A stretch of DNA of 64,000 nucleotides from Selaginella moellendorffii (Eukaryota > Plantae > Lycopodiophyta), in the NCBI RefSeq assembly GCF_000143415.4, contig NW_003314264.1, positions 1,504,733-1,568,732 of the forward strand, read 5' to 3'. Shown here piece by piece: positions 12,056-60,299 of the stretch (its first letter is position 1; each line of letters opens with the position of its first letter). The notes beneath the pieces are model-generated. The model made no database searches. It saw only the letters and a list, made by a program, of their open reading frames with translations, and had not been told where the DNA came from. The position numbers and the translations under genes are program-made.

Positions 12056-12191
12056 CACAGACCATCATTCGCAATAATGCCTGTATCATATCAAACCTTT
12101 GTTCCAACTTTATAAGAATTTGAGCCATGGTCAGTAAAATAAGACTATTACAAATTTGACAGTGAAATTTTTTCTTTCTACACAATCACGA

Positions 12192-14714
12192 TCACGACTC
12201 GGCCATCACCTCGTCTCGTTGAGCCTTCTCGCTACTCTCCTGGCTTTTCTTCTCGCCATCAATCTCTCCCTCGGCTGCTACGTCCGGCTTTGCTGCTGCC
12301 GGTGGCTCCTCCTTCTCTACTTCTTTCGCTGCCTCGGCTCCATCTTCCTTCTTCTCCTGCGCCGCTGGCTCCCCCGCGTCCACCATCTCGGTGTCTCCAT
12401 CGCTCTTCTTGGTCGCCGCCTTGGCTTGGGACTTCTCCTCCTCGGCCTTGGCAGCCACGTTCTCTTTCTCGCCGGGCTTTGCCTTGTCCTTGTCGACCTC
12501 GTCGTCGGTGTCGGGGAGCTTTCTCAACTCCTCCCGTATCAGAGCCTTCGCCCGGGATTTCATGGTTCCGTCCGTGCAGTCGATGTTTAACCTTTCGCCT
12601 GTGACGTTAAACGGTGTCAGCATCTCTCTTTCAAAACCGTATGAAGCTAAGCTAGATCGCTTACCAAGTTTCTTGATGATAACAGTGAAAGAAGCCTGCA
12701 GATCGCAAACAAGAGAGGATGAAGTGAGACGCAAGCCTTCTTAATAACCAGCAACAGCCATACCTTCTTGAGGTCGAGAGTTTGGAGTAGGTCCTTGACA
12801 TGAGTCCGAATCTCCTCGTCCTTCGAATGGTTGGACTGAGCTTCATCGCCTCCCTCTGGAACCATCAATACAAATGGTTAGAAATGCAGCTACGGAATAC
12901 CACTGATCGCCCAGCCAACCTTTGTCGGTCGATTTCTCTTTGCCCTTCGTGGACTTCTTCGCTGACTTGGCCGGAGTCTTTTCCTTCTTCTTGGTTTTCT
13001 CCTTCTCGGTCTCCTTTTTCTTCCTGGTAAAAACTTTCGTATCCGTCTTCTGCTTCTTAGGTGGCGGCCTTTCGCCAGAGTCAGCTTCTGTATCGTCAGC
13101 GGACTCGCTCGCATCTCCTTCTTCATCTGACGTTTTCTTTTGCTCGATCTCGTCGTCGTCATCAGATTCCTCCTCGTCGTCCTCTTCCACCACCTGCTTT
13201 CTTTTTCTGCCGCTGCGTTTTGGTGGCTCGTCTGAGTCCTGCTTCTGCACATGATCATAAAGTGAGATTTATGCAAGTTGCCAGCACAAATACTACCTTA
13301 GGCCTTCCCGGACTTTTCCCCTTGCGTTTCTTTTCAGCCTGGAAAAAATAATACAGTAAAATGCATCTGTGGCAAAGCTACAAATACCTGCTCTTTTTCT
13401 GTGTCTTCCAATTTTATATCTGTTGTCGCGTGTGGAGCTGCTAGGAACTCGAAGACCTTCGCAACCAAGTCCTCCTACATTTGAAAGGTCATTAGTATCA
13501 GAAGCACAAGCTCGCTGCTATCAACAAACCTTTTTCCCCTTCATATTCAAATCCAAGATATCTATAAGCTCGTTTAGCTCGTCCTTATGGCACTTTTCAA
13601 GCCGCTCCCTCGCTTTAATCTGGTCCTTTTCCTGATTTATTTTGGCAACAGCCAGTCAAAACCACCACGAGCGCAGTAAAATAATACCTTCTCTCCCCAA
13701 CAATGGCCCGAAAACTGGAGAAGATTTTGCTTGACAGTAGCCGCCTGCGAGCAAAGACATCAGAAAAGAACAAACAATAAATGATGCGGTTACCTTAGAC
13801 CGCTGAGCGAAGAAGACGTAGTGGAGAGTCTTCAATACAGGATCGTTCTTGTTAATTTTACTTAGTTTGTAAGCCACTGCATCACCGAAAAGCAAACGAG
13901 CGGGTAAGCATCAGGCGACAGCGAAAGGAATAACGCAGATATACCATTCGGGATTTCTTTCAGAGGAGTGCCGCCTCCCTGCCAACGTGCTTCCGACTTA
14001 GTCACGCAGCCGAAAGAAACACAAGCGATAAAGAAGAAGATGTACCTTTCTGATATAAACGTCCTTCGACTTTGGCATATCCAGAGATCCTGCTCCAAAC
14101 CTCTCAATCGATTTCTTCTCCCGTGAAGGCCTGTCAATCGGAGGCGAGAACTCGGCTTTCTTCCTTCCCCGCTTGGACTTGGGTGTTTCCTCGGACCCCT
14201 CACCTTTCTCAGGCTTCTCGGTCGGAGTCGAGGGTGTGGCCTCTTCCTTCTCCTTGGCCTTGCTGCTATCTTTCCTGGGCCGTCCCCTCTTCTTTGGTTG
14301 CGGCTTGGACGCCTCAGCCTCGCCGTTCTCGGCATCCTCTTCGGCCTTTTCATCCTTCTCCTCAACACCTTCCATGGCCGTGGCATCACCACTCTCACCC
14401 TCTTTCTCCTTCTCTTTCTCCTTCTCATCTTCCTTCTCGTCGCTCTCGGCTTTCTTGTCCTCCTCCTCCTCGGCGGCCTTGGCCTTACTATCACCGTCCG
14501 CTCCTTCCTTCTCTTGGCCCGACTTACCTGGAGCTTCTTCCGGTGGCGCCGGAGCGGCTTCTTGGGTCTGGACGCCCTGGATAGACTCCTCGCCCTTCAC
14601 CTCCTCCTCGCTCTTCTTCTCCGTCAAATCTTTCGCTTCCTTGGCGGGCGCTAGATTCTCTTCGGCCGCCGCCGCCGCCGCCACGGGCGCAGCGTCGCCT
14701 TCCTCCGTCGCCAT
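12192..14714 (-). CDS. DEK: DEK-domain chromatin-associated protein
   Basis: E/K-rich N-terminus, DRPSREKKSIERF, GGGTPLKEIPN|VAYKLSK, C-terminal DEK_C (EEIRTHVKDLLQTLDLKK|ASFTVIIKKL...KALIREEL). Confidence 0.9.
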
Positions 14715-33440: not shown

Positions 33441-34283
33441 CTTCCTCTTGTTCCTTGCTTGATGTTTCCGAAGCAACAAAACATATGGAGTTTTATAGTT
33501 AGTCCATTTAAATTGGTTAAGGTGTTTTGGATTTATCCTCAACTAAAGATATATTACATTTGTCAACTGATTTTCGTCAACTTTCATTTCTTGGATTATA
33601 TAAAGGCCTTCCACAAAGAAATTCTCTTCTAGATATCATTGTGATTGTTTTTGCTTGTACTTTTGTAAGTGTGCATTTAGATAGAACATGGAATACTTTG
33701 CTGCTAATTGCTAAATACCATGCCAAATGCCAAAACATTAACCACACTGAAGAGAACACAAGCAACTCAAGTGTTTATACTTTGCATCATGAGTCATAGT
33801 GATTGATTTTCTTATTTTTTCTCCATCTTCTTGTTCTCAAATGCAAAAGAGGATTTTCATTTGTCCTATTTTGGCTGGTTTGATAGATCGAATGAGGTTT
33901 CCGTCCAGCAAGCGATTTGGTAGGCGCCGAATATTTGGATTTGGCACGCAACTTATTTTTGTCAGCCCGTTGGAACAAGCGCAGATAGATGCCGATTTGA
34001 AATTCCATTTTGTCATGGATCATGGTCGCCTCGGCTCACATAATGGTGTTTTGTGTTTCGGCCCGTTCTTCCTGCTTCTTCAAGTAGGTATTGGATAAGT
34101 GTGGTTTCATTCACTGTTCCTCACATCGATTGGCGCAAGGCTCAAAAATATGCTCAATGCATTCTCTTGGAAAAAGAAGGCCGTGTGCCTTGGTGACGTC
34201 GTGGGAGTCCTTGAGATAGATAAGGGTAACATTCCATTCTCAAATAAAATTAAACTTAGATTCAACTTATTCTTTGAGATTTG

Positions 34284-34420
34284 TAGGGCGGGCCTTCCAG
34301 AAATTCTCGACGGCCTCCCAAAGGAGACACGAAGAGGGGGTTTGGAAATAGTTTTCAACCAGCAATTGACGCGTCTCGGTAAAACCTCATAAACTGCGTC
34401 ATTGCCCCAAGCGCAAAGAT
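34284..34420 (-). ncRNA. U4: U4 snRNA, variant copy with shortened 3' stem-loop
   Basis: Reverse complement begins ATCTTTGCGCTTGGGGCAATGACGCAG, includes TCAATTGCTGGTTGAAAACTATTTCCAAACCCCC and Sm site AATTTCTGG; lacks 12 nt of the 3' hairpin versus the 37769 copy. Confidence 0.88.
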
Positions 34421-35574
34421 AAATTAAACCTCCATCCTAGCTTGGTTTATATACCCGCGGAGTGGCACGATTTCAGTCCTTGGCTCGTGGAATAGGGCTG
34501 GCTGGCGCAGCATATTCCTAGAAGTCAAGGTCAACGAGAATATGCATTGCTGGCCAGAAAGCTGGAAGCACGAGACCTTTGTAGCCGCTCTTTTTTTCTG
34601 CTGTTATGTGGAAACCAGGAGACTTATCTCCATTTTGTTCTGCAAGCAGCTGATGACAGTCCGAACGGGACTGACCGACACCGAGAGAACAAATCATGGG
34701 CTTCTCCCAAAATTCTTGGCGCATGAATGCACTTTTCATGATTCTACTGTTTGTCATTTTATATCAACTCTATAGTTAATATAAACCTTCATTTATAAAC
34801 CCCTTGCACAAGAATTGTTATGGAATTGTGATTGGTTTTGCTTGTACTTCTACAAAGACATACTCTTACAGCACTATAGCCTTTCGAAATTGCCTTGGAA
34901 CATTTCATACTGGACTATAGAAGAGTTTTCTAGGTTTGCATCTTTCTTTCTTTCTTTCTTCTTGTTACTAATTGAAAATTGTATAGTGCTCGAGTCGGAC
35001 CAGATCTTATGAGTGCTCTCAAGAAGCAATATTCCCCATGTAACCCATAAAATGGTCTGGGCATATGCCACGTGACAGTCGTGGCCACATGCTCAAAATA
35101 TATCTGAATCGTGTCATAACAAAAAGGAGAAAAAAAATTTGAAGACAAAACAATGGAATTTATAGGGCTATAAAAGTAAAAGATAAACCTCTATTACTTT
35201 AAAGAAAGAAAAGTTTAACACAATTCTTTCTAACAAAAAGTCAAGGCTCTAAAAGTTAATTAAAAGCAAAGGGATCTGTAGACTTTTGGCCTCTGCAGAA
35301 AGAAAATTTTGGTTAGAACTTCACTGACCACATTTATTTTTTCTAGTGACTCCAAGTGCACATATGCATTGCCATTGCCAAGACACCTTTGGGGCAAGAT
35401 AGAGAACCTAACAGGACATGAATGAAGAGTGCGATTTTAGAAGGATCAAGACGCTGCAATTGCCAAGGAAGTAGGGGAGGGGCAGGTGATCGGGGGGAGG
35501 GGATACTGACTACTACCACCCAGGGTTTAGGGGTGCAGAAACACAAGTAACTCCGAGTGTCTATACTTTGCTTC

Positions 35575-37638
35575 ATGAGTTCAAGCACAGTGATTGTTTT
35601 TCTTATTTCTTTCTTCATCTTCTCATTCTCAAATGCACAAGAGGACTCATCTGTGCTTTTGAGCTTCAAAAACTCCGTGGAAGATCCATCTAAAACTTTA
35701 TCCAGCTGGAATATAAGTGATAACTTCTGCCAGCACTGGAATGGCGTAGCCTGCACGACAAAAGGCCGAGTTTCCGTTCTTGAGCTTGAGCATTTAACGT
35801 TACCGGGCTCGCTCTTGGTTTCCACAATCAATGCTCTACCTTTCTTACTGGAGCTATCTGTCTTGGGAAGCAACTTCACTGATGCCATGAATTCCTCTGA
35901 ACATGCCTGCTCACTTGAGATGATCAAGCTGTCAAGTAACCAAAACATGACCTTCACGAGCAGTTTTGATGCTATGCTCAGCTGCCAAGGTCTAAAGGTT
36001 CTCAATCTTTCAAACAATCAAATTGATGGTAAGATAGAAGTGCCAATAGGCAATGCTTTGGAGGTAATAGATGTTTCACATAACTTACTTAGTGGTGAGG
36101 TGCCCCTCTTCCTGTCTTCACAGTGCAGGAGGTTGAGATATCTAGACCTCTCCCACAATCATCTCACCGGAGAACTTCCAGTGGATCTTCTTAAAAATTG
36201 TACTAATCTGCAGCAAATCTCTCTGGCCTACAACAGCTTCCATGGCCCGTCATTTCCCTCTATTCACTCCTTGCCATCGCTGGAATTTCTCGATGCTAGC
36301 TTCAATAACTTCACAGGTCCAGTTCCCGCAATTCATGAGAACCTCAAGCATCTTAATCTCAGCTCAAACAGTTTCAATACAACCAGGGAAAACTTATGTC
36401 CATCGCTCAACTCCTCGAGGCTGGAGAGTCTGATCCTGGTCAACAACAAGCTCACCGGAAGGGTATTGGACAGTGTCTTGAATTGCTCCAGCCTTAAGAT
36501 GTTGGATTTGAGCTTCAACTTGTTAGCAGGAGAAATTCCAAGCACTATCTGCAAACAACTTCCCAAGCTCGAGCATTTCCTTGCGTGGGTAAACAACCTC
36601 GAAGGGCAACTTCCCCCAAACTTGGCCTCATGCAGCAACCTCACCAAGATCATCCTCACTTTCAACAATCTCAGTGGAAACATTCCACCTGAGCTGTTAT
36701 CCAACACAAAGAGCCTCCAATGGTTAAGTTTGAGTAATAACAGATTGAGTGGAGAGTTTCCTGATTCATTGGAGCATGCAAATGAGCTGTTAGTGCTTCA
36801 GTTGAGCAACAACAGCCTGCAGGGCAAGCTGCCCAGCAACATGACCGTCCAGACGATAAATCTCCGCGGAAACAGCTTGAGCGGGAGGATTCCAGCCTCT
36901 TTGAATGGTTTCGAAGGCAGCAAACTTGCCAAGCCCAACGTTGCGGGGACGAGCTTGAAGATAGCCTCAGGGATCAAGACATGTGGGTGCATGGACAGCA
37001 TTTTCATGCTACAAGGAATCTATTTGGAAGAAATGGGGAGTCTACTCACAGCCAAGAGTGGTGGCTGCAAATGCTCCATAAGTTTCCTTCCAGCAAGCTT
37101 TTATGGTTTCTCCACCTCCAGTCCTTCCTTCATCGATGTTTCATTCAACAAATTGGTGGGAGGCATCCCTCGCGAGCTTGGGAGCATGCAGGACGCCACT
37201 TACATCAGCCTTGCGCACAACTTCCTGTCGGGAACAATCCCAGAGGAGCTCGGGGATCTCAAGAACATGATAGGAATGGATTTGTCATTCAATGGTCTCC
37301 AAGGAAGCATTCCAGGCTCGTTTTCCTCGCTCCAGTCCCTCACAGGGTTGAATGTGTCTCACAACAACTTGTCCGGTCCGATTCCACAGGGTGGCCAGCT
37401 TGCGACACTTGATGCCAGTAGCTACGCAGGAAATGCCGGTCTTTGTGGCTTCCCTCTAGCGTCGTGCACCACATCGCCACCAACAGCGACAAATCGTGCT
37501 GACCATGGCTATGGTGGATTTGGACCGGTTCTTGCGGTGAGCTTTGCAATTGGGGTGGTGGTCTCAGTTATCTGCTGCACAATGGTAGTCACCATTGATA
37601 GTAAAAAACGCTTTGTGGAGAGAGCTTGCTATGGATGA
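35575..37638 (+). CDS. LRR receptor-like protein with BRI1/BRL2-like island domain, TM helix, no kinase
   Basis: Signal peptide, LRRNT (LLSFK...WN...C.HWNGVAC), ~20 plant LRRs, ~70-aa non-LRR insert before last 4 LRRs, YAGNAGLCGFPL cap, TM VLAVSFAIGVVVSVICC, short tail then TGA. Confidence 0.93.
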   Translation: MSSSTVIVFLISFFIFSFSNAQEDSSVLLSFKNSVEDPSKTLSSWNISDNFCQHWNGVACTTKGRVSVLELEHLTLPGSLLVSTINALPFLLELSVLGSNFTDAMNSSEHACSLEMIKLSSNQNMTFTSSFDAMLSCQGLKVLNLSNNQIDGKIEVPIGNALEVIDVSHNLLSGEVPLFLSSQCRRLRYLDLSHNHLTGELPVDLLKNCTNLQQISLAYNSFHGPSFPSIHSLPSLEFLDASFNNFTGPVPAIHENLKHLNLSSNSFNTTRENLCPSLNSSRLESLILVNNKLTGRVLDSVLNCSSLKMLDLSFNLLAGEIPSTICKQLPKLEHFLAWVNNLEGQLPPNLASCSNLTKIILTFNNLSGNIPPELLSNTKSLQWLSLSNNRLSGEFPDSLEHANELLVLQLSNNSLQGKLPSNMTVQTINLRGNSLSGRIPASLNGFEGSKLAKPNVAGTSLKIASGIKTCGCMDSIFMLQGIYLEEMGSLLTAKSGGCKCSISFLPASFYGFSTSSPSFIDVSFNKLVGGIPRELGSMQDATYISLAHNFLSGTIPEELGDLKNMIGMDLSFNGLQGSIPGSFSSLQSLTGLNVSHNNLSGPIPQGGQLATLDASSYAGNAGLCGFPLASCTTSPPTATNRADHGYGGFGPVLAVSFAIGVVVSVICCTMVVTIDSKKRFVERACYG

Positions 37639-37768
37639 TCGACACACCAAAAAGAAAAAAATGCCCAGCCACGCTTAGTCAAAGCTTTTTTTCAAAGTCC
37701 ACCCCGATCAAGCTACTTTTGTGATCATGTGTACGTTACTTTATTATTCAACTTAGATTTAGGATTTG

Positions 37769-37917
37769 TAGGCCCGAGCCTAGGGCGGGCCTTCCAGAAA
37801 TTCTCGACGGCCTCCCGAAGGAGACACGAAGAGGGGGTTTGGAAATAGTTTTCAACCAGCAATTGACGCGTCTCGGTAAAACCTCATAAACTGCGTCATT
37901 GCCCCAAGCGCAAAGAT
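37769..37917 (-). ncRNA. U4: U4 snRNA, full-length copy
   Basis: Matches remembered plant U4 (ATCTTTGCGCTTGGGGCAATGACGCAG...GAGAATTTCTGGAAGGCCCGCCCTAGGCTCGGGCCTA), 149 nt; downstream CA..AGTTGAA 3' box. Confidence 0.95.
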
Positions 37918-37943
37918 AAATTAAACCCTCATCTTAGCTCGAC

Positions 37944-37990
37944 TTATATACCCGAGGAGTGGCACGATTTCAGTCCTTGGCTCGTGGGAT
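37944..37990 (-). promoter_or_regulatory. snRNA promoter: USE-like ATCCCACGAG (37990-37981) and TATATAA (37950-37944)
   Basis: USE at about -73 to -64 and TATA at about -33 relative to U4 start, Pol II-type plant snRNA spacing. Confidence 0.8.
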
Positions 37991-38064
37991 AGGGCTGGCT
38001 GGCGCAGCATATTCCTAGAACTGATTGTCCCTAAAAGTTAAAAAATATGCATTTATTCACTCGC

Positions 38065-39492
38065 TCATGCTTCATGGGCTAGAGTTTTCTCGGGGAGGAT
38101 CTCCTGGAAAAATTTCTCGAGCTGCTCGTGGTAGAGCGCCGGAAAGCTCCGCAAATGATCTACGTGAGGAGATATCCGCATGTCGAAGCACGAGACCTTG
38201 TAGCCGCTCTTTTTCTGCAAATCCATGAACTCTTCCACGTAGCTCGCTGGGATGACTCGGTCGGCACTGCTGTAGATGTAGAGCTGCGGGCATCGCGGCT
38301 GCTTGCTCGACAAAATGGAGATGATTCTTGCAAGTCTCCTGGTTTCCACAACAGAAAAGGAGAGCCGAGATGTTAGAAACTAGCGCCGCAGGAAAAGATC
38401 TAGCGAGGAAAGAGCACCTCTTACAGTTTGACAGCGGGAACCGCGAGTAGAACCGCGAAGAACTTCTCCAGGACTGCCAGGAGTAGAGTCTCGGACGCGC
38501 TCGGCTGCGCAAGGATTGCTCGCTCGGCGTCGGTCAGTCCCGCCAGCGACTGCGTCGAGAAGCTTTGCTTCTTGAGAAATGCTGTTGCGAACCCCGAGGC
38601 CCAGACCTTGTCAAAGCGTATCAGCTGGATGTAAGAACACGACCAGGATCACGTAAAACTTCGTCGGCTTACCTGGGGACTGAGCTCGGCAGCAGGCCCC
38701 GAATCTACAACGCATCCTTTTATTCTGCTCGTGAGGTGCTGCTGCCCTTGCTGCTGGAGTTTCTCGAGTAGAGCTCCATAGCTGTGAAGAAGGAGTCAAA
38801 TCAACACCATTGCTTTGACAACTAGGAAAAATAAGAAGACCACTCTAGAAAAACCATTAAAAATAAAAAATAAAATAAAAACCTGACTGCTAGAGAAAAC
38901 TTACTCTGTTGGGAACTTACAAGAACCAGCCGGTGTTGCTAAAGGTGTGGAACAGCACCGATTTTTCGTTTCTTCCACCGCTCGCTAGCCACTGCTTGAT
39001 TTCCGCGTAGAGCAAATCGACATGCCTGTCGGCCTTCCCAATGACGCCGAGGCTCAGCAAATCCGGCATTGGCATCACGAAAGTCATAGCACTGATCCCT
39101 CTCGAGTTATACCACTCGGCATATTTCTTCAAGTGCTTGTGTTGAGCACCCAGCCATCCCAGGAGCACTACCACCAGATCTCCCTCTCCATCTCCAAGCC
39201 AAGAATCTCCATCGCGGGCATTTTTCCTGTCCGAGACCCCGTGCATGACGATGCTTTGCTTCGCGGGATCCGGAGACACGCGATCTGTGACAAACGGGAG
39301 CTGGAATTTGATCCGCGCCGGCCAGAAGACATGGAAATGCGCCCGTTGCGAGCTGGAGCACGAGATTATAGGCCGCCTTTGACGACGCGGAGGAGCTACA
39401 CGAGCCACACTGGCGACACTGGATCTCGTGGAACGCGCATTCTTGCCTGTGATGCGGCCCGCAGCAGGACGCGCCAGGGAGTGAAGATTCAT
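38065..39492 (-). CDS. TMEM53/DUF829 alpha/beta-hydrolase-like protein
   Basis: VVVLLGWLGAQHKHLKKYAEWY, FHTFSNTGW, IRGLLPSS, CPQLYIYSSADRVIP, SPHVDHLR. Confidence 0.9.
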
Positions 39493-39784
39493 GGCGGAGA
39501 CCGGCCGATCGTGCCCTCCCCGTGGCAGAAGCCCTAAACCCTGTTTTAGGGTTCTTCGTTTAACATCCTTTTAGGGTTCTTCGCTAACATCAAGAGACAT
39601 AAAAAGAATCCTTTGCACATTATTGTGTGAGGCAACCAAACCCATCACCGAGGAAGAAGAAAGAAGAATCGTCACAGCCCAGCCAGCATTGTCCTGTGAC
39701 GCCCCATATCTCTACAAACCCCTGCCCCTCTTCTTCTTCGTTCTTCCTCGTTTCTTCCTCTATAGACCCGCCCAATTCCGCGGA

Positions 39785-41389
39785 TCAAGAGAAATCGTAA
39801 ACCTCTGGAATCGCCACCGGGAACTGGTCGATGCAATCCGCCCAGGGCCCCTTCTCGCTCGCCTTGATCGTCCGCAGCGCCCGCCACACGGCGCTGTTAC
39901 ACTTGAACCCGCTCCCAAACGCGATCTGCCACACGCGGTTCCCCTTCCTCATCCTCCCCTTGGCCTCGATGTACGCGAGCTCGTACCAGATCGAGGAGCT
40001 GGACGTGTTCCCGAATCGGTACAGCGTCATCCGCGACGCCTCGACGTGCTCCGCGGTGAGCTGCAAGTTCTTCTCCAGCTCGTCGATCACCGCGCGGCCG
40101 CCCGCGTGGATGCAAAAGTGGTGGAACGCCAGCCGAAAGTCCGGGATGTATGGCTTCACCGCGCGCTTGAACACCTTCCGCGCCACCAGGAAGCTGAAGA
40201 AGATGATCTGCTCGGACAGTGGCAGCACCAGCGGCCCCATGGTCGTGATGTTGGTCTTGAGCGCCTGCCCGGCGATGGCCATGAGATCTTTGGAGAGCGA
40301 CACGCCCATCTTGGAGTTCTCGTCCTCCTCCTGGTAGACGCAGCGAAACGACTTGTCGTCGGCGCCCTTGTGCGTCCGCACGGTGTGGAGGAGCTCGTAC
40401 TTGGCGCGGCGGCGGTCGGATCGTCGGTTGCTGAGCAGCATCGCGGCGCCGCCGACGCGGAAGAGGCAATTCGGGATGAGCATGGAGCGGCGGTTGCCGA
40501 AGTACCAGTTCTGGGTGATGTTCTCGGTGCTCACCACGATGGCGTAGTCGTTGCCGTGGACCTGGAGCATGTCCTTGGCGAGGTCGATGGCGATCACTCC
40601 CGCGCTGCAGCCCATCCCTCCCAGGTTGTAAGAGCGGATGTTGCCGCGCATCTTGTACTTGTTGACGATCATCGCCGAGAGCGATGGCGTGGGGTTGAAG
40701 AGGCTGCAGTTGACGACCAGGATCCCGACGTCCTTGGGCTTGACGCCCGTCTTGTGGAAGAGCTCGTCCAGCGCGCTAAACATGACGGTCTCGGCCTCCT
40801 GGCGCGCCGCATCCATGGATGGTCGCGGCGGGAGGTAGTGCATCGCGGGCGGGAGCGCGGTCTGCTCGCCCAGCCCGGAGCGCTCCAGGATCCGGCGCTG
40901 GAACTCGAGGCTCTTGTCGTCGAAGCTCCCCGAGAGCTTGGAGTGCTCCATGAAGGAGGCGAAGGGGACGCGGATGTTGGGCGATGGCTTGTGGCACGCG
41001 TAGTCGACGAGGAAGACGCTGCGCGGGCGGGACATGAAGTAGACGGTGGCGGCGAAGACGAGCAGCGCGGAGCACGTCATGACGCTGACGAGGTTGAATT
41101 TGAGGTGGATCCAGAGCTGGTGGATGTCCTCGGGGCCCAGGCGGCCGACCTCGATCGCTACCCCGAGCATCAGCGGGACGAGCGTGAGCGTGATGAGATG
41201 CGTCACCAGGTAGTGGTAGCCGAGCTTGACGTACTTGAGGTTGACGCTCTGGAGGAAATCCGGGAGCGGCAGCCGCCGTGATCCTCTGGACCCGCTGCTC
41301 CTCCGCAGCAGCCTCCCGCCTCCATCGCCAATTCCGATTCCTGAGGAGGCGCTAGCAGTGGCAGCGGCGCTGGGTCTCTCCTCGGCCAT
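39785..41389 (-). CDS. KCS: 3-ketoacyl-CoA synthase (FAE1/KCS), intronless
   Basis: [66 protein letters not shown]. Confidence 0.97.
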
Positions 41390-51919: not shown

Positions 51920-54360
51920 ATGGGTCGAGGACTCCAGCGGAGCCGGTGGATGGGACTTTGCGTGGGAATGTGGATGCAAGCCTGCGGCGGGATCTCGTAC
52001 GCCTTCTCGCTCTACTCGGCGGATTTGAAGCAAGTCATGGGCTACAACCAGGAGCTCATCGACGCGCTGGGCACCGCCAAGGATATCGGAGGGAATGTAG
52101 GCATTGTTTCTGGGCTCTTGATCGACAGGACCTCCGCGTCTTTCGTGCTCCTCGTCGGTGGCTTGATGCACTTGAGTTTCTACTCGATGGTATGGAGATT
52201 TTCTTTTGTGTTCTTACGTGTTTGTCTCACGTGTTTTTTTGTTTTTTTGTTTTTTTTGTTTTTTGTTTTCTCTCCTGGTTGGAACTTGGATCTTCCAATC
52301 CAGCTCTACCTTGCCTCTACAAAGCAGATCTTTCCTACACACTGGCAGGTATGATTCCAAGCGAAAGTTTGGATGAATCTTTAAAGGATTTGCTTGGAAG
52401 TTCTTCTTTTGTCTGTTAGATGTGTGGGATTATCATGCTCGGCACTAACGGAGCAACATGGTTTAACACGGCTGTTCTCGTCACCTGGTAATGCTTTCTT
52501 TCTTCTTATGATTGAACATAGGGAGTGTGTTTCGCTAAAAACTTGGTGGCAGCATGAGAAACTTTCCCTCGGACAGAGGCGTGGTTGTAGGCCTTCTCAA
52601 AGGATTTATTGGCCTCAGTGGTGCCATCTTCACTCAGGTTTGAAGAGCATTCTCGTTCTCAGTCTTAAGTTTTTGTTTCGTTCTTCGTTTTTGCTAAAAC
52701 GCAGGTCTATACTGCGATTTATGCACCACACACTGGCCCGTTTCTTCTATTCTGTGCGACGTTCCCACCAATGGTAGCACTTGTTTCCATGCTTTATATT
52801 CGTCCTATCGATCCTCCAAGGAACAAGGACGAATCAGACGATCACAAGTTTACAATGCTGTACGTAAGTTTAGGCCAGTGGTAAGCTACCCTTTGTCTGG
52901 ATCGATTCTTAGGCTTTCTTGTTTATCCCAGATCACCGGTCTCGTATTGGCATTCTACCTTATGTGCATCATCTTGCTCCAGGTAACCTTCGTTACTTTC
53001 GAGTTAATGGACCTCTGTTTCTCTTCTTCCAGGATTTCTTTGCCGTGAGGAAAGCAGCCAGCCAGTTTTTCATGTTTATCATGCTTCTCATTCTTTTGGT
53101 TCCTGGTGCCATCTCTGTAAGCATACAGTGCTCCCCGCTTTGCTGTTTTCTAAGTTTTCTAGCCTCTGCGTTCTTCCAGCTTCATCCTGCGGATGGAAGA
53201 CAGAAGATCCATCCTGATACTGATAGTCTGTTCGTCAAGACACCGAAAATGCTGAAGAACTCGATAAGAAATCCGATAACTGTAGACGTTGGACACAGGA
53301 TAGCGGAGCTCCGGAATGATGGAGCTGTAAATAATGGCGGCTTGCCCGGCTCTCCTTCAAAGTCCAAACTCCGCCTTGGTAGCGATTATACCCTGACTCA
53401 AGCTGTGAGGACGGAGGACTTCTGGTACGTAATTCTCTCCTTCGTTTATCTTCGTTTATCTTCTCTATTCACGTAGTGTTTTTGAGCTCGTTTCTTTCGT
53501 AGGCTTTTGTTCTTTGCAATGGGATGTGGCACTGGCAGTGGTCTCACTGCAATAAACAACTTAGCGCAGGTGTGTATGAGCTATCTTCACACCCACAAAG
53601 TTTTGCTCGCAGAACACTACTAAAGCTTCCTGATACTTTCAGATGGCCGAGTCTCTGAATTCCAAGAGCATAGGAGCATTTGTTGCGCTGGTTAGCGTGT
53701 GGAACTTCCTCGGCAGGCTAGGATCGGGGTAATGCTTTTAGATTCCTTTGTCTCCTCTGATTGTTCTCCCGCAGTTATATTTCCGAGTTCTTCATGAAAC
53801 GGTCCGGAACTCCAAGGCCGGTTTTTCTTCTGATTGTTCAAGCGCTCATGGGATCTGCGCATTTGCTCTTTGCTTCCTCGGGTAAAAAGTTTCTTCTCGA
53901 TTCTCATTGTGATTCTCACGGGTTATGAAAACGCAGTTCCTTCGTTGCTCTACGGAGCATCGATACTCGTCGGGCTTGCTCACGGAGCTCACTGGACTCT
54001 GATGGTGGCAACATCCTCAGAGCTCTTTGGCCTCAAGAACTTTGGGGCTCTCTACAACACACTCAGGTACAAAAAGCTTCCTTTCGTTTCCTCTTTGTAA
54101 CAAAAACCAAGAGTTTCTCTCGCAGCATTTCTTCCACTATTGGATCCTACGTACTGTCTGTGAAGTTGGCTGGCTATTTGTATGACCAACAAGCTGCTGC
54201 TGCCAACGTGAGGAGGTGCAAGGGACCACAGTGCTTTAGGCTCACGTTTCTTATCATGGCCTTAGTCTGCTTGATCGGTTGCGTTGCTCTTGTCCGCCTT
54301 GTGTCCCGGACGAGGCTAGTCTACCGTGATATTCAGAGGCTCAAGGCAGCTAGCCGATGA
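51920..54360 (+). CDS. Nodulin-like MFS transporter (NFD4 family)
   Basis: SRWM...WMQACGGISYAFSLYS, AKDIGGNVG, WFNTAVLVT, GLLKGFIGLSGAIF, INNLAQ, ELFGLKNFGALYN, CKGPQCFRLTF. Confidence 0.93.
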
Positions 54361-54499
54361 TCAGAGCTTGGCTGGAATTCAGAACTGCGGCATACATTCT
54401 TCCAAATGCAAGATGTCTAAAGCCTGGCGTATGAAAACATACCTGGGTTCTAATTCTTCCTAGGAGGACCGTGTACTGCGAAAGGCCATCGGGTCACTA

Positions 54500-57275
54500 A
54501 TTTTTCCCAGTAAGACTCTTGTTTTTTACATGAAAAAATATGTACTGGAATGGAAACTATATTTTTGGGCATGGTACCAAGTAAGTTTTGGGAGAATAAC
54601 CAGAGTGAACAAGCTGGTCAGGGTTTCTAATGAGGGTCTACTCAATTGATTTAGATGCTGTAGTTCAAGATATTGAGTTTTTGAACATTTTTGTGGATTT
54701 CGAATTGCTAGTAGAGTAGTAGATGTAGTTTAAAATTAATTGGAAGTTCTTAGTTCAAAAAAAATAAATGTTAAATTATATTTATAAGGTTTATATATAT
54801 TACCATGCTTATAGTAATACCATTTATTTGGGACGAATCCATTTTTGAATATATATAAGTAGGGGTTTAAACTCCAATTAATATATTTATTCTTATATCT
54901 CAAGCATTTACTATTGCAAATTGTGCTTGCAAGATAAAGTTTTTGGCAATGTTTTGCTTAATATTTGGGATTGTGCTTTTTTTTCTTCTCTAGATATAGT
55001 TTTTTACAAGATTTAGGATTGTAATTATTATATATGTTTTTTTTGTCTACTATACGATGTTGTTAATTGAAGTGTGTATCATTAAAGGCTATGGTTGATG
55101 TCTCATAGTTGTCATTTAATTCTATTGTTATGTCTTTTTGAGATAAGAGTTTTTGGTATTGTGAGGCATGATTATGTTAGTATTGCTCTTTAGTGTTTTG
55201 CCATTTTGAACTTTTGTAGGATGTAACTATATAATTTTTTATATTTTCGGTGTCTTGCATCTCCTATTGAAGTGGAGTGTGATTGTGATATTAATTAGAG
55301 AGTTGTGGATAATGTAATTTGGTTTTTAGAGGATGTTCAAGGATCAAGTTTATGGAAAGATGATGCTTACAAGCTCGAATGAATTCTTGTTGACAAAGAA
55401 TTTGATTACTTTAAAAAACACTTTAGAAACAAGTTAGAAAATTCAATCAATATTTTATTTTGCCATATAGTCCTTTGTCTTTACCTTTTGCTTTTTTCCT
55501 AACCATTTTATATTTTTTAATCTGATTTTTTTTATTAGGTTCCTAGCATATTAATAATTTTATGATTCTTGTTTCTAGTTTAACATTGAGTTGTATCCTT
55601 TTTAAAATGATTTGGATCTTGAGAGTGTATATGTAACTAAGAATAATATTTTTATTTTGTTGGTGAAATTTTTGATTATATTTTATATTGAGTATCCAAG
55701 AGTTCAATCACTTTTGCCAAAATTTTGGGTTATATATGTTTTCTCAATGTAAGAGTTATTGAGATTTTTTATTTTACAATTGCTATTATAGAGTTTTTCT
55801 ATTCCCTTGAGAGTGTATTAATTTTCTCATCACAAATGTTGAGTTGTGTGTTAAGGAACTTAAATGATGTGAGCGTTTTATTTATCTTGTGGTGGCCAAA
55901 GTATTTTATAACAAAATATCCCTTATTATCCAACTTTTCTACTTAAACAAAATCTTTATAACACAAGATCTCTTGTTATTCAAACTTTAAGCATATTTCC
56001 TTCTTTTTATTTCCCCATTTCTACTTAGATAACTATTGAAAATTTCTTTTTTAATGCTTTTTTATTCCTATTTTTTTCTTCCATGATGTAATTTTTACTT
56101 TATCCTCTTTTCTTTGACACTTTAAACTTTTTTTTTCTTTGGAAGAGGGGGTAGAGGGGACGAACAACAATTTGCACTTGATAATAGAGTGAGAACAAGT
56201 GGATATAATAGCGAAATGGAGATCAATGACATGGATTATGGAGTGAAACTAAACATAGTGAGTCTAGATGAAATTTCTATGTAAACAATTAAATTTTCCA
56301 TTTTATTTTGGTCCTTTAATCACACTTTTGACCACTTGAGAAGTCTCACTCACAACTTTCATAGGTTCTCATCTTAATATAAGATACTTGCTAAAATTAC
56401 TAAAAGAGGTATCAAAGCCATATCAACTTTGCATTTAGTCTAAATGTTTTATGTGTCTATATCCCACTTCAAACACCCTAAAGGTACCATTAATGTACCA
56501 ACCTATTACATTAAAACCACATGATGTCCATTCTTATTATCTCATTAGTAATCTAAAACCACCTATACCATATATCTATCTTTCTAAGATTGGACTATTA
56601 ATTCCATGTTTATGACTACTTTTTAAGAACACAGCCACCTCCACTATCCCTTCTTTGATCCCCACAAGTACTTGCCATCATTGCTATTTGGTTAAGGCCT
56701 ATATGCCCATCCACCAAGTCTTACTGACTTTTGGGACTTTTTCACTATGTAACCATATATTTAGTTACAAAACAAAAGGACCATTCCCTTTCTTTCCATA
56801 ATCAAGGACTTCAAGACAATATTTCAAAATATTACAACTTAATACAAGTTTTGTACGTACTCCCACCACCTTTAACCACTAAATTGCTCTAGCCACATGA
56901 CTAGAAAAGGTTTTAATGAGCCATACAAAGTATCCAAATAGGTAGTGTTACTTATACTTAAATTAGACTATAACTTTAGATTCCCCAATGTTCATATCAT
57001 CACCCATTATAAGGGTATAATTTTTCTTGATCACACTAGTTCTTTTAAAACATTCCCTCTATTATGCTTATTAAACCCCCTAGGGTTTGGAAGACAATTC
57101 CCTACCTTTGGATATATTTAGCCCTAGATATGTCTGACCTTAGATATGTCTGACATTTTAGACACTTGGTTTCTCGGTGGCGTAAAATAATTCTAACATT
57201 GTTCCATTTTAAGTAACACTTTTATGAGTCACAACACTTACAACATGTTGGTCATTCTTTTGGATAAAAAGGACA
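54500..57275. mobile_element. AT-rich, CpG-depleted decayed repeat; probable LTR-retrotransposon remnant
   Basis: Abrupt GC drop; purine tract 56141-56160; PBS-like GGTATCAAAGC at ~56408 (cf. tRNA-Met PBS TGGTATCAGAGC); no intact ORFs. Confidence 0.45.
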
Positions 57276-57375
57276 NNNNNNNNNNNNNNNNNNNNNNNNN
57301 NNNNNNNNNNNNNNNNNNNNNNNNNNNNNNNNNNNNNNNNNNNNNNNNNNNNNNNNNNNNNNNNNNNNNNNNNNN
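57276..57375. other. Assembly gap (100 N)
   Basis: Run of N. Confidence 1.
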
Positions 57376-58219
57376 CACGGCGCACAGCTGGATTATCAAT
57401 AGTGGGCGTTAACCAAATCCAAGTTAATACTTTTCTCAATGGTGGCTAATGAGTAAATTAGAGACAAAATATATTATTTACTACAATGATGTATTGTGGA
57501 TTAGTGGCTCCCGAAGTCCCTTGGTTTGGTTCAAAATTATCACTTTAAGGTTAGTTCAAGCATTTGACAATTGCATACAAAGTTGTAGCTAGTTATCAAG
57601 ATTTTATAGTTAATTAATACTTATGCCATGGTTTTGGGCATTTCTTATATCATGGTTATCAACAACTATATTGGTAGTTCTGTGAGAACTTTAAGTTCTT
57701 GTTCCAATTAATAATTGCCCAAAAGAAGCTCTAAATGTTCCACCTAACTTATTATCATCACCATTTCATTTTTTATGGTGTAAGATCTAAAAATATATGT
57801 ACATATATGCATGTATTATTTTGTTTGAGTAATATGTTAATTATAGTAGTATCACATATAGACCATCCAGTTGATATTGAACCTGATCCATCCATCACTG
57901 CATATAAGCAAGGTTATATACCTATTCCAAATCACTCATATATTTAATTTATATTTATTTTTAATTGTACCTGTATAAAACACTAATAATAATAATCTAT
58001 AAATTAATAACCACTAAATTATATAGATATGAATTTGTAGAATTATTCTCTTCTCTAATAAGCTATAATTTAACTTAGATGGACTAGAATTGTTTAGAGC
58101 CATAGGTTTTATAAAATGGATTTAACCCTTATATTTTGAATATTGTTATGTACAGTATATATTATTTTAGTTAAGTACTATTTATTTCCTATAATTTATA
58201 ATTACTTAATATCTATATT

Positions 58220-59166
58220 ATGTGGAATTTAGTAGCAACAGTTTTAACATCCTTAATATCTATTTGCCAATATCAACTTCAAATTAGTATAGCAATATTG
58301 CCACTTCATTTTTCAAATGCACATATAGATATAATAATTGCATCAATGAGATATTTACCCACTATGGCAGGTATTCATAATGAAAGTAGATATGAACTTG
58401 GCATTGCATGGGGGTATCCTACTAGAGTTCCTTTGACTTACATGAGGTTTAAAACCTTTGCACAAAGTGAAAGAATATCTGCACAATGTAGTGTAGAATC
58501 TCCTAAGGGAGAAAGAATATTTGTTACTGGTAGATTACTATTAGAAGCATATAAAGAAATGGTTGATTTGGTTGAATTTGCTGCACAAGCTAGAGCTTAT
58601 GGACACATTCAAGTTATTATGCCATATTTTCTTGTAGATTATTTCACAGTTTCAAATCCAACAAGAAATCATAATCAACCACCACAACCAAAATTACCTC
58701 CACTTCTCTCAAATGGAATGTGTTACAAAAGTTAGGAATAGAAAGGAAAGAAATTAGTAATATTCATTCTGATTTTGTAAAATGTTGGCCTTATAATTAT
58801 ATATTAGAAGCTGGAAATTTAAAGATGATAGGATCTTATATAACCTCAACGAATAGTATTGTTTCAGAAAATTATAAATATAAGCTTACATTATATGAGA
58901 ATTGCAATCTTGTGATTCATGATATTAAGAAAAGTTTTAACAATTGGTCAACAAAAACTGAAAATAAAGATAAAAATTGTTATTTACAAGTATTAATCAC
59001 TGGTAAAGTTGGGATATGGGGTGATAATGGTGTAGTTTGGCTAGTAAAACTAGACTGCAAGAAATTATATTGTATTATGCTTGGTCTTGTTTTATATGTG
59101 GCTAATTCAGGTATACTTATGTTAAAAAATACAACTACTGGAAAAGTATTTTCAATCTCAAATTAA
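58220..59166 (+). CDS. Unknown N-terminal domain + Pro-rich linker + bulb-type (GNA-like) lectin domain; predicted intron 58731-58807
   Basis: Two ORFs joined in frame by GTTAGG...ATTAG; C-half SIVSENYKYKLTLYENCNLVIHD..WSTKT..NCYLQV..GKVGIW..VVW fits B-lectin fold. Confidence 0.6.
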
Positions 59167-59469
59167 ATGGTAAATAAAACTACTCATAATCTCTTTTACC
59201 ATATAAAATCTTAAGATTGAAAAAAACCTTTAGATACAAGTTAAGCCATGCACCTTTACATATGTCTTACTTGATTTTTATTGAGATAAATCATGGTTTA
59301 GAATGGCTATTAATAAGTCAATATAAATTTTTGGTTTTAATTTTTCTCTTTAGATTTTTGATATAGCATAATTAAGGCCAAACAATGGCAACTAAACTTG
59401 AGGATAATGATAGTTTACAATAAATATCTATTATATTTTTTCTTTTGTGAGGTCTAAATGTATAGCTAT

Positions 59470-60175: not shown

Positions 60176-60299
60176 TGCAGATTGGAATATTCTTCTAAAT
60201 ATCTTTAAGCACGCATTTAAACATACTAATTATTCGAGCAATATGACCAACCAAGTTTCTCCACTTCAATAACAAAGTAATTGCAACATGATCACCTTT

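What the first reader, a model, noticed from the sequence alone, without database searches (positions are those of the whole stretch)
35575..37638. Kinase-less receptor with a BRI1/BRL2-type ectodomain and island domain
Seen: an intact single-exon 687-aa ORF with signal peptide, LRRs, an island (about 36900-37125), 4 more LRRs, cap, TM and only a short tail, then TGA; a U4 gene follows 130 bp later, so there is no room for a kinase exon. From remembered family sequences: the LRRs flanking the island (FLAWVNNLEGQLPP...LQWLSLSNNRLSGE...LLVLQLSNNSLQG) and the island (GSKLAKPNVAGTSL...TC...FMLQGI...KS...C, then FIDVSFNKLVGGIPRELGSM...GPIPQGGQLATL...YAGNAGLCGFPL) track BRL2/BRI1 closely. Canonical BRI1-family kinases are generally held to be absent from lycophytes although these plants respond to brassinosteroids. 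Inference: this could be an RLP-type steroid or small-molecule receptor that signals via SOBIR/SERK partners, or a relic or precursor of the ectodomain fused to a kinase in seed plants. The TM has a small-residue SxxxG motif.
Basis: partly seen in the sequence, partly recalled or inferred. Interest (0 to 1): 0.8.

Follow-up and report, generated by a model that had tools for sequence, protein, structure and literature searches.

The report
Kinase-less BRI1-like receptor in Selaginella
This spikemoss gene makes a cell-surface protein whose outer part descends from the plant steroid-hormone receptor family (BRI1/BRL). It has no kinase and lacks the residues that family uses to hold the steroid, so Selaginella does carry BRI1-family genes despite published statements, but this one is probably not a classical brassinosteroid sensor.

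Summary
Window 35575-37638 (+) is an intact, intron-less 687-aa ORF: signal peptide, N-cap, 16 LRRs, a 77-aa island, 4 LRRs, C-cap, TM and a 13-aa tail. A U4 snRNA gene lies 133 bp downstream on the other strand.

- **Kinase:** none is present in the 64-kb window.
- **Transcript:** RNA reads show an unspliced transcript that ends just after the stop codon.
- **Organism:** Selaginella moellendorffii. The other haplotype is 97% identical and RefSeq already names it "BRI1".
- **Family:** the gene belongs to a Selaginella family of at least 5 kinase-less loci. In trees this family is the sister of all fern and seed-plant BRI1/BRL kinases. Grouping it with classical EIX-type RLPs is rejected (p-AU 7e-5).
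- **Island:** it is BRL-type in position, length, cysteines and profile-profile match. It is also the most diverged part (17-22% identity) and misses Pfam's Island model.
- **Steroid pocket:** the pocket residues invariant in ferns and seed plants (W564, L615, Y642, G644) are all replaced.

I read it as a BRL-derived receptor-like protein. It most likely senses an unknown ligand through SERK-type partners, which is inferred, not shown. BRL-like RLPs as a class were reported in 2024, and this scan has already found two paralogues of this gene elsewhere in the same genome. I rate interest as moderate.

The parts
35575..37638 (+). Complete single-exon CDS of the kinase-less BRL-like receptor protein (687 aa plus TGA)
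   Evidence: ORF list and translation. It is 97% identical to the RefSeq 687-aa protein named 'BRI1' of S. moellendorffii.
35575..35637 (+). Predicted signal peptide (residues 1-21, MSSSTVIVFLISFFIFSFSNA)
   Evidence: Hydrophobic N-terminus read directly from the translation. No signal-peptide predictor was run.
35638..35757 (+). N-terminal cap (LRRNT_2, residues 22-61, Cys52/Cys60)
   Evidence: Pfam PF08263, 1.4e-09; cysteine positions.
35770..36897 (+). LRR1-16 (residues about 66-441)
   Evidence: Sixteen regularly spaced beta strands in the AlphaFold model; Pfam LRR_1 and LRR_8.
36898..37128 (+). Island domain (residues 442-518, 77 aa, Cys470/472 and Cys498/500, core FMLQGIYLEE)
   Evidence: Same position and length as BRI1/BRL islands (76-81 aa), against 45-55 aa in EIX-type RLPs. 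hhalign against BRL islands gives E 4e-6 to 5e-5, and 0.37 against RLP islands. Pfam Island PF20141 does not match. Residues 447-472 have pLDDT below 50.
37129..37467 (+). LRR17-20 and C-terminal cap (residues 519-631, Cys624/Cys631); the region that binds SERK co-receptors in related receptors
   Evidence: Four strands in the model. It is 47-54% identical to BRI1/BRL over this part. The SERK role of this region is from Ngou 2024, not tested here.
37468..37518 (+). Extracellular juxtamembrane stretch (residues 632-648, TTSPPTATNRADHGYGG)
   Evidence: Read from the translation. It has one acidic and one basic residue, so it is not acidic as in typical RLPs, although the paralogues P0006, P0007 and P0008 are acidic here.
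37519..37596 (+). Transmembrane helix (residues 649-674) with stacked small-xxx-small motifs
   Evidence: Best Kyte-Doolittle windows start at 649-656. G650xxxA654, A654xxxA658, S656xxxG660 and G660xxxS664 are present, with no strict GxxxG. Helix 653-685 in the model.
37597..37635 (+). Cytoplasmic tail of 13 aa (DSKKRFVERACYG), no kinase
   Evidence: Translation. In the alignment all Selaginella paralogues end 4-16 aa after the TM, where the BRL kinases continue.
35522..37669 (+). Transcribed span seen in RNA data: unspliced, ending about 30 nt or a little more after the stop
   Evidence: Stranded reads cover bins 35509-37752. RNA contigs cover 35522-35907, 35554-36123, 36096-37197 and 36129-37635, and one X1 contig runs into sequencing adapter at 37669. 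There are no joints inside or leaving the gene.
37772..37917 (-). U4 snRNA gene, convergent with the receptor gene (context: leaves no room for a downstream exon)
   Evidence: Rfam RF00015, 106.3 bits, full length. USE-like and TATA boxes lie upstream. Minus-strand reads cover it.
34288..34420 (-). Second U4 snRNA gene upstream of the receptor gene (context)
   Evidence: Rfam RF00015, 100.6 bits.

Best explanation
This is an expressed, intact gene for a type-I membrane LRR receptor-like protein of Selaginella moellendorffii. It belongs to a Selaginella-specific family of at least five kinase-less loci. That family is the sister lineage (co-orthologue) of the BRI1/BRL receptor kinases of ferns and seed plants.

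The protein keeps the family's architecture: an LRR superhelix and a roughly 77-aa island placed before the last four LRRs. It has no kinase, and it has replaced the residues that line the brassinosteroid pocket.

Shown: identity, architecture, lineage, absence of a kinase, transcription, and weak purifying selection.

Inferred: kinase loss predates the family's diversification. The island plus the neighbouring LRRs bind a ligand that is probably not a brassinosteroid held in the BRI1 manner. The last four LRRs recruit a SERK co-receptor. Because the protein has no kinase of its own, output depends on partner kinases met through the ectodomain and the small-xxx-small transmembrane helix, in the way LRR-RLPs use SOBIR1 and BAK1.
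For: Lineage:
- PDB phmmer scores are BRL2 432 bits, BRL1/BRL3 368, BRI1 355, against RXEG1 242 and PSKR1 190. The BRL2 match is one stretch running through the island.
- With the island-plus-4-LRR piece as query, only BRL2, BRI1 and BRL1 align across the island.
- In the ectodomain tree the Selaginella family is monophyletic (99), sister to all BRI1/BRL (98), and the joint clade has support 100. The island-plus-C3 tree has the same topology.
- An AU test rejects a clade with EIX-type RLPs (p 7e-5).
- The structure model matches BRI1/BRL1/BRL3 at Z 40-42, against 31-33 for PSKR1 and RXEG1. Foldseek ranks them the same way.
- Island profile against BRL islands gives E 4e-6 to 5e-5; against RLP islands 0.37.

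No kinase:
- Pfam and tblastn on the window and on five paralogue or allele loci find none.
- RNA is unspliced and ends near the stop codon.

Maintained:
- The ORF is intact in both haplotypes. There are 21 non-synonymous against 14 synonymous differences, P=0.016 against neutrality, NG86 dN/dS 0.36.
- Paralogues only 36-48% identical all keep an ORF, a TM and a short tail.

Pocket lost:
- W564T, K601S, L615I, Y642F, G643L, G644P, M657S and F681T in two independent alignments. The fern, Ginkgo and angiosperm sequences keep W564, L615 and Y642 without exception, and G644 in all but one Nymphaea BRI1 (Ser).
Against: - The island alone is not recognised by Pfam PF20141, by phmmer against PDB or by a family profile against PDB. 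Its homology therefore rests on position, length, cysteines and a profile-profile match of 68-87% probability.
- No PSKR, PSY1R, EMS1, NILR1 or bryophyte BRL sequences could be put in the trees.
- The AlphaFold alignment was made of BRI1-family sequences, so the structural match is partly circular, and the first half of the island is modelled at pLDDT below 50.
- The partner-kinase mechanism is untested. This copy has no strict GxxxG, no acidic juxtamembrane stretch and no Kx5Y/Yx8KG island motif.
- ML dN/dS is 0.68, and 5 of the 19 allelic amino-acid changes fall in the island.
Confidence: 0.75

Rival explanations
1. It is the missing brassinosteroid (or related sterol) sensor of Selaginella. 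The island pocket still binds castasterone-like steroids, and the signal passes through SERK and adaptor kinases to BIN2/BZR1.
For: - Selaginella grows in response to epibrassinolide and is stunted by propiconazole. It has BIN2, BSU1 and BZR1 but no BRI1-type kinase (Cheon 2013, PMC3862569).
- All Selaginella proteins among the 120 best hits of the full-length search lack a kinase.
- The island keeps BRL length and cysteines.
- The BRI1-family pocket is structurally plastic, and BRL2 binds C28 brassinosteroids with moderate affinity (PMC13481262).
Against: - W564 is Thr here and Val or Met in the paralogues. W564H costs about 100-fold in affinity and phenocopies a bri1 null.
- G644 is Pro, and G644D strongly reduces binding.
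- L615, Y642 and K601, conserved from fern to angiosperm, are also replaced.
- Island identity to BRI1/BRL is only 17-22%.
- Cheon 2013 found common brassinosteroids undetectable or very low in Selaginella.
Confidence: 0.1
2. It is a decoy or dampener rather than a receptor. A kinase-less ectodomain at the membrane would sequester a ligand or SERK co-receptors and lower the signalling of other receptors.
For: - Truncated LRR-only paralogues of LRR-RLKs are common, persist in genomes and were proposed to act like microproteins (Man 2020, PMC7318236).
- This copy lacks the acidic juxtamembrane stretch and strict GxxxG that typical signalling RLPs use for SOBIR1.
- Expression is low, 1-6x against 10-30x for the neighbouring gene.
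Against: - There is no full-length BRL kinase in Selaginella for it to dampen.
- The family has diversified into several deep paralogues with fast-evolving islands, which fits varied ligand recognition better than one shared decoy role.
Confidence: 0.12
3. It is a decaying relic: a truncated remnant of a BRL kinase gene that is transcribed but no longer does anything.
For: - The kinase is gone and the pocket residues are lost.
- ML dN/dS between haplotypes is 0.68, and allelic changes cluster in the island.
Against: - The 687-codon ORF is intact in both haplotypes, with fewer non-synonymous changes than neutral (P=0.016).
- LRR scaffold residues, cap cysteines, 17 N-glycosylation sequons, the TM and a basic stop-transfer are kept.
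- Paralogues at 36-48% identity all keep the same architecture, so the kinase-less form has been maintained through a long diversification.
Confidence: 0.05
4. The gene model is incomplete, and a kinase exon lies further away and is joined by splicing.
For: Man 2020 scored 9 of 30 putative truncations in Selaginella as possible annotation errors.
Against: - There are no joints in or out of the gene in two stranded RNA-seq runs and two RNA assemblies that do show the neighbour's three introns.
- One RNA contig (X1) stops at 37635, three bases short of the TGA, and another X1 contig runs into sequencing adapter at 37669.
- There is an in-frame TGA, a convergent U4 gene 133 bp on and then a minus-strand gene.
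- No kinase-like sequence on the + strand in the remaining 26 kb.
Confidence: 0.01

Closest known systems
Arabidopsis BRL2/VH1, BRI1, BRL1 and BRL3 (LRR-RLK subfamily Xb, BRI1 clade)
   Same: - Intron-less gene.
- Signal peptide, N-cap and LRR superhelix.
- A roughly 77-aa island with two conserved cysteines before the last four LRRs, then a C-cap and a single TM.
- Best sequence matches and best structure matches.
- A joint clade with support 100.
- It has 20 LRRs. BRL2 has 21 and BRI1 25 (PMC13481262).
   Different: - No juxtamembrane or kinase domain.
- The island is only 17-22% identical and below Pfam's Island threshold.
- The steroid-contact residues W564, K601, L615, Y642 and G644 are replaced.
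- It lies outside the fern plus seed-plant clade in the ML tree.
[quoted passage not shown] 2024 (PMC10834447), and AtRLP2/RLP3 as truncated PSY1R paralogues (Man et al. 2020, PMC7318236)
   Same: Kinase-less proteins whose ectodomains nest with subfamily Xb receptor kinases. They share the island-plus-4-LRR layout, and their function is unknown.
   Different: - Ngou 2024 describes the BRL-like RLPs as highly similar to BRL1/BRL3 and as keeping the brassinosteroid-binding residues.
- This one belongs to an old, diversified, lineage-wide family in a plant that has no BRL kinase at all, and it has lost those residues.
Classical immune LRR-RLPs (RXEG1, RLP23, Cf-9, EIX2) working with SOBIR1 and BAK1
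   Same: The domain plan is the same: LRRs, an island before the last four LRRs, a TM with small-residue motifs and a short tail. Dependence on partner kinases is the likely shared logic.
   Different: - Not in their clade (AU p 7e-5).
- Their islands are 45-55 aa, without the cysteine pair and unrelated by profile (E 0.37).
- This copy has no Kx5Y/Yx8KG, no strict GxxxG and no acidic juxtamembrane stretch.
PSKR1 (phytosulfokine receptor)
   Same: Subfamily Xb, with an island before the last four LRRs and SERK as co-receptor.
   Different: PSKR1 aligns with this protein only over the four C-terminal LRRs, not the island. It scores 190 bits against 432 for BRL2 and Z 31.5 against 40-42. From my own knowledge, the PSKR1 island is about 36 aa.

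Membership tests
BRI1/BRL receptor family (LRR-RLK Xb, BRI1 clade) | Ectodomain falls in the BRI1/BRL clade in a phylogeny | tested here: met
   The joint clade has SH-aLRT 100, with the Selaginella family sister to all fern and seed-plant members. The island-plus-C3 tree gives the same topology at 83/80. PSKR/PSY1R/EMS1 and bryophyte BRLs were not available as outgroups.
BRI1/BRL receptor family (LRR-RLK Xb, BRI1 clade) | Island of about 70 aa between the fifth-last and fourth-last LRR, homologous to the BRI1 island | tested here: met
   It is 77 aa at the same position, with both cysteines in register. hhalign gives E 4e-6 (87%) and 5e-5 (68%) against BRL islands, against 0.37 for RLP islands.
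BRI1/BRL receptor family (LRR-RLK Xb, BRI1 clade) | Match to Pfam PF20141 (Brassinosteroid receptor island domain) | tested here: not met
   No hit even at E<=10, while a fern BRL scores 1.6e-12 and a BRL2 scores 1.1e-11. None of the Selaginella paralogues carries it in the precomputed lists.
BRI1/BRL receptor family (LRR-RLK Xb, BRI1 clade) | Cytoplasmic Ser/Thr kinase domain | tested here: not met
   The tail is 13 aa. There is no Pfam kinase, no kinase by tblastn in the window or at the paralogue loci, and no splice to another exon.
BRI1/BRL receptor family (LRR-RLK Xb, BRI1 clade) | Conserved brassinosteroid-contact residues (W564, Y597, Y599, K601, L615, Y642, G644 and others) | tested here: not met
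   W564T, Y597L, Y599I, K601S, L615I, Y642F, G643L, G644P, M657S and F681T; only F658 is kept. Two alignments agree on these sites.
BRI1/BRL receptor family (LRR-RLK Xb, BRI1 clade) | Binds brassinosteroids and recruits a SERK | not testable with these tools
   This needs binding assays.
LRR receptor-like proteins with island + 4 LRRs (Ngou 2024 class) | Signal peptide, LRR ectodomain, single TM, short tail, no kinase | tested here: met
LRR receptor-like proteins with island + 4 LRRs (Ngou 2024 class) | Island placed before the last four LRRs | tested here: met
   Four LRR strands (519-521, 543-545, 567-569, 591-593) follow the island.
LRR receptor-like proteins with island + 4 LRRs (Ngou 2024 class) | GxxxG motif in the TM and acidic extracellular juxtamembrane stretch (SOBIR1 interface) | tested here: inconclusive
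   This copy has no strict GxxxG, only small-xxx-small motifs (G650/A654/A658, S656/G660/S664), and its juxtamembrane stretch has 1 acidic and 1 basic residue. Paralogue P0017 has GxxxG, and P0006, P0007 and P0008 have strongly acidic stretches.
LRR receptor-like proteins with island + 4 LRRs (Ngou 2024 class) | Kx5Y or Yx8KG lysine motif in the island (over 75% of RLPs) | tested here: not met
   Neither motif is in residues 442-518. According to Ngou 2024, fewer than 5% of Xb kinase islands have them.
LRR receptor-like proteins with island + 4 LRRs (Ngou 2024 class) | Groups with the classical RLP clade | tested here: not met
   An AU test rejects a clade with 12 EIX/RLP-type proteins (delta lnL 89.7, p 7e-5).
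PSKR/PSY1R clade | Island and ectodomain similar to PSKR1 | tested here: not met
   PSKR1 aligns only from query position about 86-93 of the 216-aa piece, which is after the island. It scores 190 bits against 432 for BRL2. No PSKR sequences were available for a tree.

The most novel reading that the evidence does not exclude
The kinase-less BRL co-orthologues are how Selaginella perceives its own growth-promoting steroids. A remodelled island pocket (Thr, Val or Met in place of W564) would bind a non-canonical sterol. The signal would be passed to the conserved BIN2/BZR1 module through SERK and an adaptor kinase. That would be steroid sensing by a receptor-like protein, and it would date the island to before the split of lycophytes and euphyllophytes.
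Probability: 0.1. Interest if true: 0.85.

Novelty: new member of a known kind. Interest (0 to 1): 0.5.

Why it matters
Several papers state that Selaginella has no BRI1 homologue, or that the island domain exists only in seed plants or from ferns onward (PMC3862569, PMC9223546, PMC4926431, PMC9478962, PMC13261678). Those surveys looked for kinases.

This gene and its paralogues show that the BRI1/BRL ectodomain lineage, island included, is present in a lycophyte. That places the island at or before the common ancestor of vascular plants.

In this lineage only kinase-less forms survive, with an altered pocket. That gives concrete candidates for asking how Selaginella responds to brassinosteroids. 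It also provides a natural test of what a BRL ectodomain does without its kinase.

The class of BRL-like RLPs is already published (Ngou 2024), and RefSeq already names the gene model. What is new is the lineage and its consequences, not the kind of protein.

Tried and rejected
1. The exhaustive representative search with the C-terminal 308 aa was uninformative. All 150 best hits were 1.2-7.8 kaa multi-LRR proteins apart from one Selaginella fragment (P0002), because scores sum over many repeats. It gave no outgroups and no lycophyte relatives.

2. The word search restricted to residues 425-640 was dominated by generic LRR kinases and EIX-type RLPs for the same reason. I used it only as a source of RLP and XI/XII outgroups.

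3. The island alone found nothing with Pfam at E<=10, with phmmer against PDB or with a family profile against PDB (one chance hit). Only profile-profile comparison detects the relation.

4. I could not obtain PSKR, PSY1R, EMS1, NILR1, bryophyte BRL or other lycophyte sequences, so those branches are missing from the trees.

5. I did not send a complex prediction with a SERK.

6. Ferreira-Guerra 2020 (Curr Opin Plant Biol) is not held in the library, so its statement on lycophytes could not be checked.

7. I considered retroposition as the origin of the single exon and rejected it as unnecessary. From my own knowledge, BRI1-family genes are generally intron-less.

Full report
**Observation**

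The window holds an ORF at 35557-37638 on the + strand. Pfam finds an N-terminal LRR cap (PF08263) and LRR families, and no kinase.

An AlphaFold2 model (mean pLDDT 80.6, pTM 0.77) shows this layout:
- 16 regularly spaced LRR strands;
- an insert at residues 442-518;
- four more LRR strands;
- a cap;
- a C-terminal helix.

The hydrophobic segment is residues 649-674. The tail is 13 aa (DSKKRFVERACYG). The ectodomain has 17 N-glycosylation sequons and paired cysteines in both caps and in the island.

Rfam places a full-length U4 snRNA gene at 37772-37917 on the minus strand, 133 bp after the TGA, and a second one at 34288-34420. A BRL2 kinase domain used as a tblastn query finds nothing on the + strand in the whole 64-kb window.

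**Organism and gene model**

The best database match is a 687-aa protein of Selaginella moellendorffii, 97% identical, which RefSeq names 'protein BRASSINOSTEROID INSENSITIVE 1'. Its locus (GCA_000143415.2, GL377590.1) has the same neighbours, including the downstream DUF829 gene and the U4 units. The window is therefore the other haplotype or another assembly of the same locus.

**Transcription**

I laid two stranded RNA-seq runs and two RNA assemblies on 34200-39800.
- The two assemblies carry the spliced form of the neighbouring minus-strand gene, so they are RNA.
- Sense reads cover bins 35509-37752 at 1-6x.
- Contigs cover 35522-35907, 35554-36123, 36096-37197 and 36129-37635. One X1 contig runs into sequencing adapter at 37669.
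- No joint lies inside the gene or leaves it, while the three introns of the neighbouring gene are all seen.

The mRNA is therefore unspliced and ends shortly after the stop codon.

**Family**

All Selaginella proteins among the 120 best hits of the full-length search lack a kinase. They are P0004 (641 aa, 48% identical), P0006 (784), P0007 (940), P0008 (893), P0010 (751), P0017 (749) and P0121 (699).

In alignment they all end 4-16 aa after the TM, at the point where BRL kinases continue into the juxtamembrane and kinase domains. Their loci have unrelated genes downstream and no BRL-kinase remnant. One locus holds a tandem pair.

The best non-Selaginella hits are angiosperm BRL2, BRI1 and BRL1/3 kinases at 33-39% identity. 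No Selaginella BRL kinase appears. This agrees with Cheon 2013 and Zheng 2022, who found none.

**Which lineage?**

Sequence comparison with solved structures:
- BRL2 scores 432 bits, in one stretch through the island.
- BRL1/BRL3 score 368 and BRI1 355.
- GSO1 scores 334, FLS2 310, the RLP RXEG1 242 and PSKR1 190.
- With only the island-plus-4-LRR piece as query, BRL2, BRI1 and BRL1 are the only chains whose best stretch crosses the island. PSKR1, RXEG1 and the rest align only with the four LRRs.

Phylogeny of the ectodomain (54 rows; outgroups are EIX-type RLPs and subfamily XI/XII kinases):
- The Selaginella family is monophyletic (SH-aLRT 99).
- It is sister to a clade of all fern, Ginkgo, conifer and angiosperm BRI1/BRL (98).
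- The two together have support 100 on a branch of 0.42.
- A careful tree of the island plus last four LRRs alone gives the same topology with weaker support, 83/80.
- An AU test rejects a clade of the family with EIX-type RLPs (delta lnL 89.7, p 7e-5).
- An AU test does not reject a position next to BRL2 plus the fern sequence (p 0.25).

Structure comparison agrees:
- BRI1, BRL1 and BRL3 match at Z 40-42 (rmsd 2.3-3.4 Å over 511-582 residues).
- BRL2 matches at 35, RXEG1 at 32.8 and PSKR1 at 31.5. Foldseek gives the same order.
- The model was built from a BRI1-family alignment, so this is not fully independent.

PSKR, PSY1R, EMS1, NILR1 and bryophyte BRLs could not be fetched and are missing from the trees.

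**The island**

Evidence that it is BRL-type:
- It sits before the last four LRRs.
- It is 77 aa, against 76-81 in BRI1/BRL and 45-55 in EIX-type RLPs.
- It has the two cysteines in register and a core FMLQGIYLEE that aligns with LLEFxGIRxE.
- Profile-profile comparison of Selaginella islands with BRL islands gives E 4e-6 (87%) and, with a second pair of alignments, 5e-5 (68%). Against RLP islands it gives 0.37 (0.2%).

Evidence of divergence:
- It is the most diverged part of the protein, at 17-22% identity to BRI1/BRL islands. BRI1, BRL1 and BRL2 share 37-42% among themselves, and the last four LRRs of this protein are 47-54% identical to theirs.
- Pfam's Island model, phmmer and a family profile against PDB all fail to recognise it alone.
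- Its first half is modelled with pLDDT below 50.

So 'BRI1-type island' holds, but 'tracks BRI1 closely' does not.

**The steroid pocket**

Hothorn and co-workers (PMC13481262) mutated 11 pocket residues of BRI1. W564H lowers brassinolide affinity about 100-fold and phenocopies a null allele, and G644D strongly reduces binding.

I mapped ten of those eleven residues, plus F658. In two independent alignments this protein has:
- W564T, Y597L, Y599I, K601S, L615I;
- Y642F, G643L, G644P, M657S, F681T.

The paralogues have Val or Met at position 564. The fern, Ginkgo, conifer and angiosperm sequences keep W564, L615 and Y642 without exception, and G644 in all but one Nymphaea BRI1 (Ser). Binding of brassinosteroids in the BRI1 manner is therefore unlikely. 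The pocket's known plasticity and the unusual steroid profile of Selaginella keep a small chance open.

**Is it maintained?**

- The two haplotypes differ at 35 nucleotides: 21 in non-synonymous and 14 in synonymous codon changes. Neutrality would give about 77% non-synonymous (P=0.016).
- NG86 dN/dS is 0.36 and ML is 0.68.
- Five of the 19 amino-acid differences lie in the island (P=0.054).
- Within the family the island is also the most variable part, at 20-37% identity against 49-68% in the LRRs.
- Deep paralogues keep the whole architecture.

The gene is under constraint, with a fast-evolving island.

**Mechanism**

Shown: a glycosylated type-I membrane LRR protein of the BRL lineage, without a kinase, and transcribed.

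Inferred from what is known of the island-plus-4-LRR class (Ngou 2024):
- The island and the adjacent LRRs form the ligand site.
- The last four LRRs recruit a SERK.
- Output needs partner kinases.

The TM has stacked small-xxx-small motifs but no strict GxxxG. The juxtamembrane stretch is not acidic in this copy, although it is in P0006, P0007 and P0008. The RLP lysine motifs are absent. Use of a SOBIR1-type adaptor is therefore possible but not indicated strongly. Decoy and relic readings are less likely, for the reasons given under rival explanations.

**Comparison with what is known, and novelty**

- LRR-only paralogues of LRR-RLKs are common (Man 2020).
- S. moellendorffii was among their 350 genomes but is not discussed.
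- RefSeq already annotates this model.
- This scan has already reported two paralogues in the same genome with the same conclusion (s1-408288 and s1-432167). I reached mine from my own tests.

What is not in the literature I could search is that Selaginella's only BRI1/BRL-lineage genes are a diversified kinase-less family with a BRL-type island. This contradicts repeated statements that the plant has no BRI1 homologue and that the island is confined to seed plants or ferns.

I file it as a new member of a known kind, of moderate interest.

Noticed in passing
window 34288-34420 (-) and 37772-37917 (-): Two full-length U4 snRNA genes in the same orientation bracket the receptor gene. Each has a USE-like box (TCCCACGAGCC / TTCCACGAGCC) about 28 nt upstream of a TATATAA box. 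The units of about 240-280 bp are about 95% alike, and the same arrangement is in the other haplotype. Minus-strand reads cover the downstream copy.
   Followed up: partly
window 36444-37378 (-): There is antisense RNA over the island and C-terminal LRR coding part of the receptor gene. In run X17 its depth (about 4x) equals the sense depth. It is not continuous with the U4 gene, and the library shows no strand leakage on the neighbouring gene.
   Followed up: no
window 34692-34727: A 36-nt expressed piece has loose ends on both sides in a raw RNA run and in an RNA contig. It looks like a short exon of a spliced RNA whose other exons lie outside 34200-39800.
   Followed up: no
window 38055-39532 (-): This is a DUF829-family gene with three introns confirmed by reads (38338-38423, 38605-38670, 38782-38920). 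The first intron has an alternative splice site 7 nt apart (38337^38417 against 38337^38424).
   Followed up: partly
window 54000-64000: G+C falls from about 0.5 to 0.28-0.33 over the last 10 kb of the window, and no ORF of 200 aa or more lies there. The nature of the region was not examined.
   Followed up: no
L005:6094-7722 and 10124-12202: The paralogue P0017 sits in a tandem pair of kinase-less BRL-like genes on scaffold GL377594.1. The annotated gene models overlap there.
   Followed up: no
I did not look at it.
   Followed up: no
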